This document shows, piece by piece, positions 28,573-35,456 of a DNA stretch of 64,000 bases. The notes beneath the pieces were generated by a model. That model searched no databases. It was not told where the DNA came from and saw only the letters and a list, made by a program, of their open reading frames with translations. Source of the stretch: Lepidodermella squamata (Eukaryota > Animalia > Gastrotricha); NCBI GenBank assembly GCA_047495785.1, contig JBLDXI010000059.1, positions 248,001-312,000 on the forward strand, read 5' to 3'. The position numbers were made by a program, and so were the translations under genes. Position 1 is the stretch's first letter, and each line of letters starts with the position of its first letter.

Positions 28573-30390
28573 TGTTAATAATCCTAGTCCCCATAGTCGC
28601 TAAGGACACATAAGGCAAGAAATCAAGGCTGAAGGTCATTGTAGTTGTAGCCGGTAGTCGAGTTTTGGTTAGCCTGATAAGCGTTGTAGGAACCAGACAG
28701 TGGAGTTTGACAAGCCTGGTAGGAACCTTGTTAGGAACTTGGCATTGTTCCAAAGAAAGAGTGCGCCCATTTTCGAGATGGTTGAGATGGTTATTGTTGT
28801 TGCTCGGGCGTCGATGAATACCAGCATGGTAGATTGCGATTTTGGCCCCAGCTCGAAGGTCGAAGGCCAGAAGGTAGAGTTTTTAATTGAGCAGCAATTT
28901 CTATCCCGAAATGAACTTCGGCTGTGTCCTCGCTGTCACAGATTTTCATAACTTTCGCAGATAAATTCAGTTGACTCAACCTTCGATCGTTTGCGGCCCT
29001 TCACGGCGTCTTCTCAGCCATTTCCACACGCATTAGTCCACGCGTACGGTATATATTGCTATGCAGAGAAAATTTAGCGAGAAAATTTAGCATCATCTTC
29101 TGTCAGCTTATTCAACGGCTTTCCAGCGAGTTCTTGATTAAAGCTGATCTGTGCGAAAATATACCATTCGATTTCAACGATTTCCGCGGCGCTACTTCGA
29201 TAGGGGACACGTCATGTTAATAATGGGTCGAATGGCACCGTGAGCCTTCGAGATAGCATGTTTTACTGTATCGTAAAATGTACAATTTATAGCTATCATA
29301 CACATTAAAAAAGTAAGACTTTCGATGATCGATGTCGATTGATTATCGATGTTTAGCGAATTGCATCCCGCAATTGTTCCAATAGCAGCCCGGGCCATTA
29401 AATATGCACCTGCACGTTCCTTTCTTTCGCTAAAGCTTTTATTTCTGCATTTTTCAGCTCTCCAGAGCAGCTGCTGATCTCGACGAGCTCTGTCAAATGC
29501 AACGGAAACGACTGACAACAACGAAAACCAGGCCGAATTGAGCTACCAGCGACGATCTGAGGTTGAAGTTGTGCATTTTACTTGATTTCAGTCTCGAATT
29601 TCAGTCTTCTTGTAACACATGTTTGGGCGCCCACTTTGCACTATCGTCGTGTAACAACTGAATATATTTCTCTTGGAATATAACATGGCCTTGCTCGAAA
29701 TTCGGTCGAACCGACCCTGCAAGGCAGCTTGTCGTCTCCATAACGGACGGGCTCGCCTGGGAAAAACCAGGCCCCTCGTTCTCCCTCCTCCCTCCTCCCT
29801 CCTCCACCGACCTCACGGGTTCTAAAATTTGGAATGGATGGCTTTGTTTCGGGCTATCCGCTACTATGCGGTTTGCCCATGGAAATCTTAACTCTCGAGG
29901 AAACGCCCCATAATTTTATTTTTATTTACACTCTATAATGGTATATTTCCCTTCGGCTGCGGCGATCTGATTTCGAGATTTCGAGATTTTACGATATAAA
30001 AATATTTGTATTTGATCAAATTTTCTCTTTTCATTAATAATCAAGTCTATACAGCAATAAAGGTGTTGCGCAATCACCGCGAACAATAAAAAACGGCTAT
30101 GCCAAATGTTATGCGCCTGTGTAAAAGCTGCTACTATCGAAAGAGTAATTTGCTTATAATTGAAATCGAAAGAGTAATTTGCTCTCAATGACAATGCGCC
30201 ATCATTTGTCTCTAACATCAATCATAATTAACCTTTGGAATCGCTGATTGCGTAGGAAATCGCATGGTGTAGTAACGCTTCTATTTATATTTTATATGTA
30301 TCCAAGGAGATACATTTTGACTGGTCCATAGTCGTTAATAGATGTGTAATTTGTCCAATAATTTACCTATAGACCATAGATAGAAGTTTA

Positions 30391-32964
30391 ATGTTGCAAG
30401 GGTCCACCGACGACTGGATAATATGCCGCTTGTTTCTGTCGTCGACCTTCAAAGATTTTAACAGTGAACGCGAGCTATTGATTAAAAAGGTAGTTCCAGA
30501 ACTATGTGAGTTTGCTAATCAATACGGCATCCATATTGTCGATGTCGATCTGAGGTGGGGTGTGCCAAAGGATTCATCATCCGTATATACTATCGAAGCA
30601 TGCCTTGGAGAGCTCGACCGTTCTATTCAGGAAGCCCCTAACGGGCAACCTTTATTCCTATGTTTATTGGGCGAACGCTATGGCTGGGTGCCAAATCCCA
30701 CGGAACTTCCTACTGATCTGCTTGAGCGCTATCAATGGCCGGTTGATGCCGATCCGTTGCCTTCTATTACCCATATGGAAGTTCTTTACGGCGCCCTTAA
30801 CCGCGGAAATCGAAATGCGCTCTTCTGCTTTCGCTCTCCATCATTTCTATCTGCAGTGGATGAGAGGATTTCTCAGTCTTCATTTGTCGATGATCTATCC
30901 ACCCAACGCGTCTTGTTGAAGAAAGAGATATTTGCAAGAGTTGTCGATCCCGACTCTCAGATACTGGACAATTATCCTGTTTCGATCGTAGGGGAGACTG
31001 AGAATCAGGTCGAGTTGGGTTTCAATGAGGAGTTAAGCGCATACATTGTCGATTTCTTTAAGCGAGCACTACAAAGACAATACCCTGAGCGTTTTGAACG
31101 GCGTTTCACAGCAGCGAACCATACCAGTCTTGAAAATCACCACCAGACACAATTTTTGCGTCGCCAGAATCAGCTGCTGTTCGCAATGGATAGTCTTTGC
31201 TCGTGGTTGACTGAAGAGATTTTCGATAATAACTCGCCTGAATTAGACTTAAATGAACTAACTGAGCTGCTAAACAAGGCAGCCATTTCAAGTGGAGATT
31301 TGGAAATAAATCTTGGGCACTGGTCTGGCGCTGAATCTTGGCCGTCACGGTTGATTTGCCTGGCGTCAGCGCCTGGCTACGGCAAAACCTCCTTACTGTG
31401 CGCCTTGGCTGATCACTTGGCTCGCTTGAAGCTGGAAGTCAATTTATTTTACCACTTCTGCGGATCTATAGTTTCTGACGATTCTACAAGCTACGCCTTA
31501 TTTCTTCGCCGATTGAACGTCTTTTTCGCTGATAGTTTATCGCGGATTAATACGGAATCTGAGAAAGCAGAAGCCCGTGGAAACCAGAGCTGTGCCGACG
31601 TCGTCGAACTCTCGGTTGAAATGGCTCGATTGAAAAGCTTGTTGAAACAGGTGGAAGATGCAGAAAATCACAAATTTGTGATTCTAATCGACGCTTTGGA
31701 GCATTTTCGAGAGCTGAGGGATTCATCTCAATGCACCTGGGTCAACTTTTTGCCTGTCCGCTTCCCTAAAAACTGTCGAGTGCTTTTCACACGAACTCTT
31801 ACAGAACCAGCTGAAATTTCAGCTCTAGATTATTCCCTTGCTTGGCTAGATAAATTCTGCTTGCTCGCCCAGGTCCATTTAATTAGAATGCCGGGCACTT
31901 CTGCTGAATTACGTAGCGCGATAGCGGAAAAATATTTTTCTACTTATAACAAAAAATTGGACCCTGAACAGATGAGCAAGTTGACTTCAAAACAGGGTGC
32001 TCAAGTTGCTTTGTGGCTGCGTCTTGCTTGCGAAGAACTGCGCGTTTTCGGCGATTTTAGCAGAGTAACGCAGCTTATTGTTGATTTAGAAGAAACTCTA
32101 TCAGGTTTAATCAGCCAAATACTGCTGCGACTTATTTCCGAGTCACCTCAATTGCCGATGAAACGCTTTTTAATGTTCATGGCCGCTTCGCCGAGAGCTT
32201 TGCCGGAATCAGAATTGCCTTCGCTTTTAGCCGACGAAATTACGGGTGATCCTCTGGCGTCGTTGGATTTAGCTAAGCTGTATCGCATGTTGAAACCCTA
32301 TTTGATTTTATCGAAGAATAAAGCTTGCCCCACCGTTGCTCCATTCCACAACGCATTTGTGAAAGCGTCTGCTAAATTAGGCAATGTTTTCGAAACTAAA
32401 GCAGAGTTAGCTCGCTTCTTTTTGAACAAAGCTGACAAGAGCTTGAAGGAAGATTGGATTGTAACTATCATGGATCTGCTTTGGGAAAGCAATCATCGGG
32501 AAGAATTGTTGGATAATTTGCAAAATAATGACTTGTTCCGTCTTCCCAATAAGAAGTTCCATCGACAACTCTATCTAGAGAGATATCGTTGTAAAATGAT
32601 GGTTATGACGGCTACTTTAGGCATTAAGCTGGAAGCTTGTATGGGCTGTGCTAATAAATTCGACCACGCGCGGCGCGTACCACTCGCTAATTGTTGCCTG
32701 CTTTGCAAAGACGTGCTGCCTATGCAATTCGCCGGCTTTCAACCTTTGAAGCCTGCTATTCTGTGCATGCATCACCCTCAGATGATGTTTAAACAAGGCT
32801 TTTGTTGGTTTTGTAAATCGTGGTGGGGCCCATTCTACAACATGTGGAAACCTCTTTATTTGTGCCAAACTTGTGATTTCGGAACAAGCTCTTTTGTTCC
32901 ACGGTGCTGCTTTGCTTCCACTGAGATTTCTATCAGAAATGTCGCGCTTAAAACCGAGAAATGA
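30391..32964 (+). CDS. DUF4062 plus NACHT P-loop NTPase (TEP1/NPHP3/TTC41-like) with a Cys-rich C-terminal module
   Basis: RLFLSSTFKDFNSERELL, VDLRWGV, LLGERYGW, SITHMEV (DUF4062); Walker A APGYGKT; Walker B ILIDALE; YNKKLD..QM and LWLRLACEELRVFG as in TEP1-like proteins; 857 aa open frame. Confidence 0.9.
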   Translation: MLQGSTDDWIICRLFLSSTFKDFNSERELLIKKVVPELCEFANQYGIHIVDVDLRWGVPKDSSSVYTIEACLGELDRSIQEAPNGQPLFLCLLGERYGWVPNPTELPTDLLERYQWPVDADPLPSITHMEVLYGALNRGNRNALFCFRSPSFLSAVDERISQSSFVDDLSTQRVLLKKEIFARVVDPDSQILDNYPVSIVGETENQVELGFNEELSAYIVDFFKRALQRQYPERFERRFTAANHTSLENHHQTQFLRRQNQLLFAMDSLCSWLTEEIFDNNSPELDLNELTELLNKAAISSGDLEINLGHWSGAESWPSRLICLASAPGYGKTSLLCALADHLARLKLEVNLFYHFCGSIVSDDSTSYALFLRRLNVFFADSLSRINTESEKAEARGNQSCADVVELSVEMARLKSLLKQVEDAENHKFVILIDALEHFRELRDSSQCTWVNFLPVRFPKNCRVLFTRTLTEPAEISALDYSLAWLDKFCLLAQVHLIRMPGTSAELRSAIAEKYFSTYNKKLDPEQMSKLTSKQGAQVALWLRLACEELRVFGDFSRVTQLIVDLEETLSGLISQILLRLISESPQLPMKRFLMFMAASPRALPESELPSLLADEITGDPLASLDLAKLYRMLKPYLILSKNKACPTVAPFHNAFVKASAKLGNVFETKAELARFFLNKADKSLKEDWIVTIMDLLWESNHREELLDNLQNNDLFRLPNKKFHRQLYLERYRCKMMVMTATLGIKLEACMGCANKFDHARRVPLANCCLLCKDVLPMQFAGFQPLKPAILCMHHPQMMFKQGFCWFCKSWWGPFYNMWKPLYLCQTCDFGTSSFVPRCCFASTEISIRNVALKTEK

Positions 32965-33080: not shown

Positions 33081-35456
33081 ATGGCTAACGCCTATTTTCG
33101 CCTTCGAGCTGTTCTTACCGGCCACGAAAAAGACGTTCGATGTTTGTCGTCTGGTAGTGGACTCGCCGATGATCTCTCAACTTGTCTCATTTCCGGCTCT
33201 CGTGATCTAACGATTCGATTGTGGAAACCGAACGATTTCGACGTTTCCTTCATGGAAAATTTCTGTGCCGGTGGTCATTCAAGCTACGTTGCCTGCGTTT
33301 GTGTCGTGCCGTGTGGTACTCAGTCTTACGAAGCCGGTGCCATAGTTAGCGGGGCAGGCGATGGGACAATTCTTGTCCACAACTTCAGCTCACCCGAGCC
33401 TGTTGTTCGCATCAATAATGCGCATGAAAATACGGTATCGGCCTTATATACTGGAGCCTCAGGTTTCATGGTCTCCGGGTCGTGGGATCAAACCGCCAAG
33501 GTCTGGATGAATTTCAAACCGATTATGACGCTGAAAGGCCACGAAGCTGCTGTCTGGGCTGTTCTCGGCATCCAGCAAAGCGGCCAAATAATCACTGGAT
33601 CAGCCGATAAAACCATACGAATTTGGTCTGCGGGTCAGTGCCAAAAAGTGTTGAAAGGTCACACGGATTGCGTAAGGGGTCTAGCCTTACTACCCCCTAC
33701 CCCTGACCACCCTGAGCAGACCCTGCTGTCTTGCTCAAACGACGCGACAATTCGTCGTTGGAACTTGGTTACTGGTGAGTGTATCGCGACATACCAGGGT
33801 CATACGAATTTTATTTATTCAATCGCGAGCGGCATTGATTCAATCAGCGGCCAGCCGTTTTTCATCAGCGCCGGTGAAGATAGGACTGTTCGAATCTGGA
33901 ACCCGGCTGACAGCTCGGCGCCGGTTCAAACAATCCCGCACGCCGCTACATCAGTCTGGAGTGTCTGCATCCTCCCTAATGGCGATATTGCCAGCGGATC
34001 AAGCGACGGGCAAATCACGGTGTTCACCGTCGCGCCCGAACGCGTTGCCTCTGCTGAAGTTGTTGCTGAATTCGAAAAGGCGGTTTCGAAAACTGCTATG
34101 CCCGCGCAAACGTTTGGTGGCATCAAATTCGCCGACTTGCCTGGTCCGGATGTGTTAATGTACCCAGGCAAGCGTGACGGTCAAACCGTTATGGTCCGTT
34201 TTGGTGAAACAGAGAAAGACGGCCATGTCGAGTGTCACATGTGGTCGGGTGCTGAAGAGCGGTGGAATTTAGTTGGAACCGTGGTTGGTGCGAACGAAAC
34301 TGGTGGCTCTGGAGGCTCTGGTGGGAAAGTTTCGTACTTGGGTAAAGACTACGATTATGTTTTCGATGTTGATATTGACGGCCAGACGTTGAAATTGCCG
34401 TATAACGCAAACGAAAATCCGTGGGTTGCTGCGAATAATTTCATCGAGAAAAACGAGTTGAATCAAGCTTTTCTGGAGGAAGTCGCTAATTTCATCACTA
34501 AAAACACGCAATCCATCACAATTGGCGCGCCTGAGTGGAGTGGAAATGTCGACCCGTTTACAGGGGGTAGTAGCTACCATACGGGCGGCGGCAATCAACA
34601 GCCGCAAAATGGCGATAAAAACGGCCATCACCCACCTGAAGTCGAATATTACCCTGAGAAGAAATATTTATACTTCGAAACTGCTCCAAATTTAGCTGGT
34701 CTCAGGGCTAAATTGTTGGAATTTGACGCTGCCCATGCGCCGCATTCAGTCGGAGGTGACGTTCTGAACGGTTTAGTCGACGCAGTTGCTGGTCTCAGTG
34801 AAACGTTCGATGGTATGCTGAAAGAAGAAAATGTGCAATTACTCGGTGAGCTGATTTCTTGGCCCGATAGCCATCTCGTTCCTGTTTTGGACTTGACTCG
34901 AGTTGTTGCTAAAAATGAAGACATCATTGGGCTCTTGTTCAAGAACCCGCGCTTCCTCCCTGCCTTGCTCAAGCAACTGATGCCGGAAAAGCCTACTTCG
35001 AACCAATTTTTGACCCTTCGTATCCTATGCAATGTTTTCGCATCAGCCCCAGGTCGTATGATAATGCTGGCAAATGCGACTAAAATCATCGGTGGTCTCG
35101 AAGGTCTCATTGATTCAAATAATAAGAGCGTTCAAATCGCTCTTTCGACAATTCTACTAAATTACGCTGTGATTGGGTTTAACGAAAAACTCGCTGAGAT
35201 AAAATTACTGCAAAGCGTTGTGAATACAATTCGATTTACGCTGGAACGTGGCGCCAAGGTGGTTGATAGCGAGGCTATTTTCCGCCTTATTGTCGCTCTC
35301 GGTACGCTTGTCAGCATCGGCCAAGCCGCTGTGACGGAAGCTGTTAAACAGAACTGTTCCAATTTAGTGAAAACCGTTGGAAAAGACGTGCCTTCGGAAG
35401 AAAAACGAATTCGTGATAGCTGCAAATCGCTTTCATTGCTTCTTTCAGCATCTTGA
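33081..35456 (+). CDS. PLAA: Phospholipase A2-activating protein / Doa1-Ufd3 (WD40-PFU-PUL), intronless
   Basis: Seven WD40 repeats, PFU motif YLGKDYDYVFDVDIDG..LKLPYN..ENPW.AA..FI.KNEL...FLEEVANFI, DPFTG motif and a PUL domain ending EAIFRLIVALGTL. Confidence 0.97.
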   Translation: MANAYFRLRAVLTGHEKDVRCLSSGSGLADDLSTCLISGSRDLTIRLWKPNDFDVSFMENFCAGGHSSYVACVCVVPCGTQSYEAGAIVSGAGDGTILVHNFSSPEPVVRINNAHENTVSALYTGASGFMVSGSWDQTAKVWMNFKPIMTLKGHEAAVWAVLGIQQSGQIITGSADKTIRIWSAGQCQKVLKGHTDCVRGLALLPPTPDHPEQTLLSCSNDATIRRWNLVTGECIATYQGHTNFIYSIASGIDSISGQPFFISAGEDRTVRIWNPADSSAPVQTIPHAATSVWSVCILPNGDIASGSSDGQITVFTVAPERVASAEVVAEFEKAVSKTAMPAQTFGGIKFADLPGPDVLMYPGKRDGQTVMVRFGETEKDGHVECHMWSGAEERWNLVGTVVGANETGGSGGSGGKVSYLGKDYDYVFDVDIDGQTLKLPYNANENPWVAANNFIEKNELNQAFLEEVANFITKNTQSITIGAPEWSGNVDPFTGGSSYHTGGGNQQPQNGDKNGHHPPEVEYYPEKKYLYFETAPNLAGLRAKLLEFDAAHAPHSVGGDVLNGLVDAVAGLSETFDGMLKEENVQLLGELISWPDSHLVPVLDLTRVVAKNEDIIGLLFKNPRFLPALLKQLMPEKPTSNQFLTLRILCNVFASAPGRMIMLANATKIIGGLEGLIDSNNKSVQIALSTILLNYAVIGFNEKLAEIKLLQSVVNTIRFTLERGAKVVDSEAIFRLIVALGTLVSIGQAAVTEAVKQNCSNLVKTVGKDVPSEEKRIRDSCKSLSLLLSAS

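What the first reader, a model, noticed from the sequence alone, without database searches (positions are those of the whole stretch)
32580..32915. PHF5A/Rds3-like zinc-knot module as the tail of a TEP1-like NACHT NTPase
Seen: where TEP1, NPHP3 and TTC41 have WD40 or TPR repeats, this protein ends in C...CMGC...CLLC...CMHH...CWFC...CQTC...C. Established: PHF5A/Rds3 has five CxxC pairs flanked by single cysteines, with the segment RICDECNYGSYQGRC, echoed here by YLCQTCDFGTSSFVPRC. Inference: a STAND-type NTPase with a TIR/NDT-like DUF4062 effector and a three-zinc sensor or decoy resembling a spliceosome subunit, a candidate uncharacterised innate-immune or RNA-surveillance receptor.
Basis: partly seen in the sequence, partly recalled or inferred. 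Interest (0 to 1): 0.75.

Follow-up and report, generated by a model that had tools for sequence, protein, structure and literature searches.

The report
NAD-cutting switch protein with PHF5-like zinc tail
An intact animal gene encodes an immune-receptor-like protein (NAD-cleaving head, ATP-driven switch) whose tail, instead of the usual repeats, is a conserved module with twelve zinc-binding residues; its predicted shape resembles, weakly, only the knotted spliceosome protein PHF5A among solved structures.

The parts
30391..32964 (+). Complete 857-codon gene without introns (ATG to TAA) for the NIR-NACHT-zinc-tail protein
   Evidence: Single ORF. A second copy on contig C17 is 97.3% identical with dN/dS 0.15. 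Public-run contigs cross it without joints.
30415..30897 (+). DUF4062 / NIR TIR-like NADase domain (aa 9-169)
   Evidence: Pfam PF13271 scores 30.8 bits against a cut-off of 24.7. PDB 11gz_A, the human TEP1 domain, matches at E 2.8e-21 over aa 9-169.
30778..30780 (+). Codon of E130 in the invariant S-I-T-H-M-E motif, the predicted catalytic glutamate
   Evidence: It aligns with Glu115 of chain 11gz_A, which is TEP1 E1008 if the chain is offset by 893 residues. I inferred that offset because chain R15, R61 and R83 then fall on the paper's R908, R954 and R976. E130 is invariant in 7 homologs.
31342..31797 (+). NPHP3_N / NACHT STAND P-loop NTPase (aa 318-469), with Walker A S326-T333 (31366-31389) and Walker B D434
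   Evidence: PF24883 scores 32.7 bits against a cut-off of 24.8. NACHT, AAA_16 and other P-loop models match weakly. G329, G331, K332 and D434 are invariant.
31798..32586 (+). Region after the NTPase (aa 470-732) with the invariant motif ...LACEELRVFG...; I take it to be helical/winged-helix, but only aa 723-732 were modelled
   Evidence: W542 and G554 are invariant, and E548/E549/R551/F556 nearly so, in 38 homologs. No Pfam repeat hit. The model shows a helix at aa 723-732 leading into the tail.
32587..32910 (+). Cys-rich tail, probably three zinc sites (aa 733-840): R733-C734, C750xxC753, C769xxC772, C792xxH795, C805xxC808, C825xxC828, C839-C840

Best explanation
The gene encodes a member of an old holozoan family of NLR-like STAND proteins. 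The N-terminal NIR/DUF4062 domain is a TIR-like NAD(P)+ hydrolase and would be the effector. The NACHT-type P-loop NTPase with its following region would be the nucleotide-driven oligomerisation switch. The C-terminal 110 residues form a compact, basic module with 12 conserved ligands (11 Cys and 1 His), enough for three zincs, and take the place that WD40 or TPR repeats hold in TEP1, NWD1/2, NPHP3 and TTC41. The module most likely adopts the PHF5A/Rds3 type of interleaved topology. By analogy with PHF5A, Zn1 would be held by C750/C753 + C805/C808, Zn2 by C769/C772 + C825/C828, and Zn3 by C792/H795 + C734 + C839. I propose that it is the ligand-binding or autoinhibitory end of the switch: binding of a polyanionic or protein ligand would release NACHT oligomerisation, which would bring the NIR domains together and turn on NAD+ hydrolysis. 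Shown here: the ORF, the domains, the conservation, purifying selection, and the fold prediction with its unique but weak PDB match. Inferred: zinc binding, the zinc pairing and knot, NADase activity, the sensor role and the ligand.
Confidence: 0.5

Rival explanations
1. The tail is a real zinc-binding module, but its topology is unrelated to PHF5A. It could be tandem zinc ribbons or treble clefs, or a RING/PHD-like cross-brace with an extra site. The PHF5A resemblance would then be a by-product of the same count of CxxC motifs. Its role would be generic, such as a structural cap or an oligomerisation or docking module.
Confidence: 0.3
2. The tail is an integrated decoy of PHF5A. It would mimic the spliceosomal subunit so that a pathogen factor aimed at SF3b trips the receptor.
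For: It has the same ligand formula and the closest fold. Integrated decoys are known in plant NLRs (established knowledge).
Against: PHF5A is 87% conserved per column across eukaryotes. The tail shares only 12-17% identity with it in structural alignments, and the 12 ligand positions alone would account for most of that. The tail family's own surface is free to vary, at 25% mean identity. The genome keeps a normal, separate PHF5A gene. The fusion dates back to choanoflagellates, which fits an old dedicated domain better than a recently captured decoy.
Confidence: 0.04
3. The ORF is a decaying or silent gene copy and the tail has no present function in this organism.
For: No run on record as RNA holds it. 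There are at least five loci with this tail in the genome.
Against: The 857-codon frame is intact in both copies. dN/dS is 0.15, there are no ligand changes, and third codon positions dominate the differences. Coverage in run X1 (guessed to be RNA) starts about 50 bases before the ATG and stops about 100 bases after the stop codon.
Confidence: 0.05

Closest known systems
PHF5A / Rds3 (SF3b14b; Pfam PF03660), the knotted three-zinc protein of the U2 snRNP
   Different: The tail is not a free-standing 110-aa spliceosome subunit but the C-terminal domain of an 857-aa STAND protein. The third motif is CxxH. The loops are longer, above all between motifs 1 and 2 (15 residues against 3). The window's tail gets no Pfam hit. 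PHF5A's conserved surface (SF3B1 and RNA contacts) is not shared. The tail is much more basic and its sequence varies widely. The knot is unverified.
Eukaryotic NIR(DUF4062)-NACHT NLR-like proteins: TEP1, NWD1, NWD2, NPHP3, TTC41
   Same: The N-terminal TIR-like NIR domain keeps the catalytic Glu (E 2.8e-21 to the TEP1 crystal chain). Next to it is a NACHT/NPHP3_N NTPase followed by a further conserved region. Databases name the homologs 'telomerase protein component 1-like'.
   Different: It has no TROVE domain and no WD40 or TPR repeats. The C-terminal end is the 110-residue zinc module. None of the three 2026 preprints on DUF4062 contains 'zinc' or 'PHF5' in its main text.
Bacterial NIR-Avs / NLR-like anti-phage proteins (PsAvs2, and the NIR systems Vulcan, Vesta, Swarozyc, Evangelion)
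   Same: The logic is the same three-part one: NADase effector, STAND switch, C-terminal sensor. Bacterial DUF4062-NACHT-TPR/WD40 proteins are significant full-length hits.
   Different: The bacterial sensors are repeats or helical auxiliary domains that recognise phage proteins. No bacterial hit was seen to carry the zinc tail. All named tail-bearing proteins are from holozoans.
Cross-braced binuclear treble-clef fingers (RING, PHD, LIM, C1)
   Same: They are small Cys/His-rich eukaryotic zinc modules. They give weak single-sequence and language-model hits.

Membership tests
PHF5 (Pfam PF03660; PHF5A/Rds3) | Match to the family HMM at or above the curated cut-off (26.7 bits) | tested here: not met
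   The window's tail gives no PHF5 hit even at E<=10. Seven of 78 homologs give sub-threshold hits (best E 5.8e-4). In my own HMM test the highest score was 17 bits and the match was out of register. The genome's true PHF5A scores 94.6 bits.
PHF5 (Pfam PF03660; PHF5A/Rds3) | Twelve zinc ligands arranged as a single Cys, five CxxC motifs and a single Cys | tested here: met
   The ligands are C734; 750/753; 769/772; 792/H795; 805/808; 825/828; C839. Eleven are invariant and the last is 99% conserved in 78 sequences. The PHF5A formula is taken from PMC5458519. One ligand is His instead of Cys.
PHF5 (Pfam PF03660; PHF5A/Rds3) | Three-dimensional similarity to solved PHF5A/Rds3 structures | tested here: inconclusive
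PHF5 (Pfam PF03660; PHF5A/Rds3) | Interleaved zinc pairing (motifs 1+4, 2+5, 3+two single Cys) that gives a left-handed trefoil knot | not testable with these tools
   Model coordinates are not returned, so Cys-Cys distances and knotting could not be computed. Only the secondary structure at each motif could be compared, and it agrees.
PHF5 (Pfam PF03660; PHF5A/Rds3) | Highly conserved non-ligand surface and a free-standing protein of about 110 aa in SF3b | tested here: not met
   PHF5 column identity is 87% against 25% in the tail family. Identity to PHF5A in structural alignments is 12-17%. In the long hits the domain is the C-terminal end of proteins of 600-1100 aa.
DUF4062 / NIR TIR-like NADase (Pfam PF13271) | HMM match above the cut-off and similarity to a solved member | tested here: met
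   30.8 bits against a cut-off of 24.7. PDB 11gz_A (TEP1) matches at E 2.8e-21 over aa 9-169.
DUF4062 / NIR TIR-like NADase (Pfam PF13271) | Catalytic glutamate (TEP1 E1008; PsAvs2 E108) | tested here: met
   E130 aligns with chain Glu115, which is E1008 under an offset I inferred from the positions of R908, R954 and R976. E130 is invariant in 7 homologs.
DUF4062 / NIR TIR-like NADase (Pfam PF13271) | NAD(P)+ hydrolase activity | not testable with these tools
   This needs an enzyme assay. [quoted passage not shown]
STAND / NACHT NTPase (NLR-like) | P-loop NTPase of the NACHT/NPHP3_N type with Walker A GK[ST] and a Walker B Asp | tested here: met
   PF24883 scores 32.7 bits against a cut-off of 24.8. 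NACHT itself scores 20.3 bits, below its cut-off of 26.7. G329, G331, K332 and D434 are invariant.
STAND / NACHT NTPase (NLR-like) | C-terminal repeat sensor (WD40, TPR or LRR) | tested here: not met
   No repeat family was found at E<=1. The 38 tail-bearing homologs also lack repeat hits at E<=0.001.

The most novel reading that the evidence does not exclude
The tail is a true, very distant relative of PHF5A. That would make it the second family with the knotted 'triquetra' three-zinc fold, recruited before the origin of animals as the ligand sensor of an NAD+-depleting NLR-like switch. Given its uniformly basic surface, it may recognise RNA or another polyanion. This would give a first handle on what eukaryotic NIR-NACHT proteins sense.
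Probability: 0.2. Interest if true: 0.75.

Novelty: new variant of a known kind. Interest (0 to 1): 0.55.

Why it matters
In 2026 NIR/DUF4062 domains were shown to be NADases in bacterial anti-phage systems and in human TEP1, but what the many eukaryotic NIR-NACHT proteins sense is still open. This family replaces the large repeat sensor with a small, expressible 110-residue zinc module. The family runs from choanoflagellates to amphibians. That makes the module a tractable object for structural work, metal analysis and ligand fishing. Separately, PHF5A/Rds3 was reported as the only protein with its fold in the PDB (PMC5458519). A second family with the same topology would interest people who study zinc fingers and knotted proteins, and it would show how such a fold can change its partners.

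Tried and rejected
1. A word-index homolog search restricted to the tail (aa 690-857) gave nothing. The full-length search and the exhaustive profile search did find the family.

2. phmmer and a profile search of the tail against PDB sequences gave only insignificant RING, Spt4 and GATA hits and no PHF5A.

3. The ESM Atlas shape search gave TM <=0.28. The language-model search gave PHD-like clusters at 0.83, below the trust level. Neither is informative.

4. I first took the weak Pfam PHF5 hits in 7 of 78 members as support. Inspection shows they fall in a different register from hhalign's, and real sequences barely beat reversed ones. I therefore do not count them as evidence of homology.

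5. I reject the decoy hypothesis for lack of shared surface.

6. I first thought E95 (in GERYGW) was the catalytic Glu. The alignment to the TEP1 crystal chain points to E130 instead.

7. The RNA evidence is weak. No holder is on record as RNA and only contigs could be laid, so expression is suggested but not shown.

9. Following the operators' rule, this genome's spliced PHF5A gene was searched by its second exon alone, by reference (L001:1504-1695). The joined coding sequence was not built.

Full report
THE SEQUENCE. The finding lies inside one uninterrupted open reading frame, window 30391-32964 on the + strand, 857 codons. Pfam places DUF4062 at aa 13-102 (30.8 bits, cut-off 24.7) and NPHP3_N at aa 318-469 (32.7 bits, cut-off 24.8). 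NACHT, AAA_16 and other P-loop models match the same stretch more weakly. There are no WD40, TPR or LRR hits. The last 127 residues give no Pfam hit even at E<=10. The next gene, 116 bases downstream, is an ORF without introns for a PLAA/Doa1-type protein with WD40, PFU and PUL domains.

IS IT REAL? The genome (121 Mb, 151 contigs) holds a second copy on contig C17 that is 97.3% identical. It has the same 857-codon frame, 70 nucleotide and 23 amino-acid differences, and dN/dS 0.15. Only one change falls in the tail (E730D) and none at a ligand. Contigs of two public runs cross the ORF without any joint. Among the listed differences, 24 of 40 fall on third codon positions. In run X1 (guessed to be RNA, not on record as such) coverage starts about 50 bases before the ATG and ends about 100 bases after the stop. 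I take the gene as intact and under selection. Expression is suggested but not shown.

THE FAMILY. A full-length search gave 334 hits. Most are bacterial and eukaryotic DUF4062-NACHT proteins with TPR or WD40 ends. The best few cover 96-99% of the query and end in the same Cys pattern. A profile of nine tails, searched against 1.84 billion cluster representatives, gave 106 hits, 31 of them at E<=1e-10. In the long hits (600-1100 aa) the domain sits at the C-terminal end. The other hits are short ORFs that look like isolated last exons. Of 38 longer members, 25 carry DUF4062 and 26 carry a STAND/AAA_16 NTPase at E<=0.001. The only other domain family found is PH, in two choanoflagellate-type sequences. 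Named members come from these groups:
- choanoflagellates: Monosiga, Choanoeca, Didymoeca
- cnidarians: Hydra, Rhopilema, Sanderia
- echinoderms, hemichordates and amphioxus
- a snail: Lymnaea
- bichirs and amphibians: Polypterus, Erpetoichthys, Pelobates, Lissotriton

They are annotated 'telomerase protein component 1-like' or 'TPR repeat-containing protein DDB_G0287407-like'. In 78 aligned tails, 11 ligand positions are invariant and the last Cys is 99% conserved, while mean column identity is 25%. Besides the ligands only R733, a Gly after the second CxxC and an Ala before the CxxH stand out. Spacings vary within limits (for example 13-19 residues between motifs 1 and 2), and the CxxC/H spacing is always 2. 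This genome has at least three further loci with the tail, two in tandem on C45 and one on C48. There the tail lies on its own last exon.

THE HEAD AND THE SWITCH. Three 2026 preprints show that DUF4062 ('NIR') is a TIR-like NADase. It acts in bacterial anti-phage systems and in human TEP1, it has a catalytic Glu, and most eukaryotic NIR proteins are NLR-like with NIR at the N-terminus. The N-terminal 250 residues match PDB 11gz_A (TEP1) at E 2.8e-21. If the chain is offset by 893 residues from TEP1 numbering, its Arg15, Arg61 and Arg83 fall on the paper's R908, R954 and R976. That supports the offset. Chain Glu115 is then E1008, and it aligns with our E130 in the invariant motif S-I-T-H-M-E. 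R976 aligns with R96 and R908 with K21. Walker A (G329, G331, K332) and Walker B (D434) are invariant. None of the three preprints contains 'zinc' or 'PHF5' in its main text. A full-text search for PHF5 together with NACHT returned only unrelated titles.

THE PHF5A QUESTION: EVIDENCE FOR.
(a) The ligand formula is the same. PHF5A has 12 ligands as a single Cys, five CXXC motifs and a single Cys. Its ZnF1 uses motifs 1+4, ZnF2 uses 2+5, and ZnF3 uses motif 3 plus the two single Cys. Together they form a left-handed trefoil knot. In 2017 its authors found no other protein with this fold in the PDB except Rds3 (PMC5458519).
(b) AF2 on the 9-sequence alignment gave pLDDT 76.6 and pTM 0.74. On the 78-sequence alignment it gave 85.2 and 0.79.
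(c) Foldseek against 350,542 PDB chains found nothing significant. With the second model PHF5A rows dominate again, with TM by target up to 0.49.
(f) The model's secondary structure at the five motifs is helical turn, knuckle, helix, knuckle, helix. That is the order described for the PHF5A crystal.
(g) I compared the 78-tail profile with a profile of 11 clean PHF5A/Rds3 sequences. Those were collected with exon 2 of this genome's own PHF5A gene. hhalign gives score 23.8, P 5.4e-4 and probability 30%. It aligns C769xxC772 with C30xxC33, C792xxH795 with C46xxC49, C805xxC808 with C58xxC61, and C825xxC828 with C72xxC75. At low stringency C839 aligns with C85. One hundred full column shuffles of the PHF5 alignment gave mean 11.0, sd 2.4, max 20.4. 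One hundred shuffles that keep the Cys columns gave mean 13.3, sd 2.3, max 19.1. The reversed profile gave 11.5.

FUNCTION. The tail is basic in every one of the 78 homologs. K+R minus D+E is +8.6 +/- 2.1 over about 109 residues, against +1 for the PHF5A core. Its surface is free to vary, whereas PHF5A is 87% conserved per column. That argues against a PHF5A decoy. It is compatible with a small ligand-binding or autoinhibitory end of a STAND switch, and the ligand may be a polyanion. The mechanism I propose is ligand binding at the tail, then NACHT oligomerisation, then NIR clustering, then NAD+ hydrolysis. It rests on analogy with Avs and NLR proteins and with TEP1.

EARLIER NOTES OF THIS SCAN. 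The same family had been noted on two other pieces of this genome. One follow-up (s1-422683) reached the same view as mine. The other (s1-394001) could not tie the tail to PHF5A. My tests explain the split: the tie exists only at the level of predicted fold and profile-profile comparison, and it is weak. Other notes suggest the genome is from a rotifer. I did not test that. The 50-55-base introns in its PHF5A gene and the 97%-identical gene pair are compatible with it.

VERDICT. This is a new variant of a known kind: a NIR-NACHT NLR-like protein with an undescribed C-terminal domain of 12 conserved zinc ligands, whose closest and only structural neighbour is PHF5A/Rds3. Membership in the PHF5 family is not established. 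'Works like an NLR' is a reasonable inference, and the ligand is unknown.

Noticed in passing
window 33081-35456 (+): A 791-codon ORF without introns for a PLAA/Doa1/Ufd3-type protein (WD40 propeller, PFU and PUL domains). It starts only 116 bases after the stop codon of the NIR-NACHT gene, on the same strand.
   Followed up: partly
G000:C45:270500-280499 (L010; also L005, L007) and G000:C48:285500-289500 (L009, L006): Three more genes of the same family, two in tandem on C45 and one on C48. They have short introns, and the zinc tail lies on its own last exon. The in-frame TAG reported at C48 lies just upstream of the tail exon and is probably intronic. P0001 (ENA) looks like the orthologue of the C45 type in a related organism.
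   Followed up: partly
G000:C17:2051434-2054010 (L008:635-3211): A second copy of the whole gene, 97.3% identical in nucleotides, with dN/dS 0.15. It is either an allele or a homeologous copy assembled separately. The X1 and X2 contigs carry many of the same kinds of difference, so they may derive from this copy or from another strain.
   Followed up: yes
L001:1399-1842 (G000:C7, about 390530-390973): This genome's genuine PHF5A gene has three exons separated by two introns of about 50-55 bases (GT..AG). Several database 'proteins' in the PHF5 search are read-throughs of such introns.
   Followed up: partly
window 30340-30381: A low-depth contig of run X1 (109 letters) carries 28-39 unmatched letters on both sides of a 42-base match just upstream of the ATG (TATGGATATCTTGAGCGCTAT...). 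It could be a 5' leader, a repeat or an assembly artefact.
   Followed up: no
P0135 (2668 aa) and P0136 (1084 aa), hits: Two long proteins match the tail profile in 33 and 14 separate stretches. They are probably unrelated arrays of Cys-rich repeats, not members of the family.
   Followed up: no
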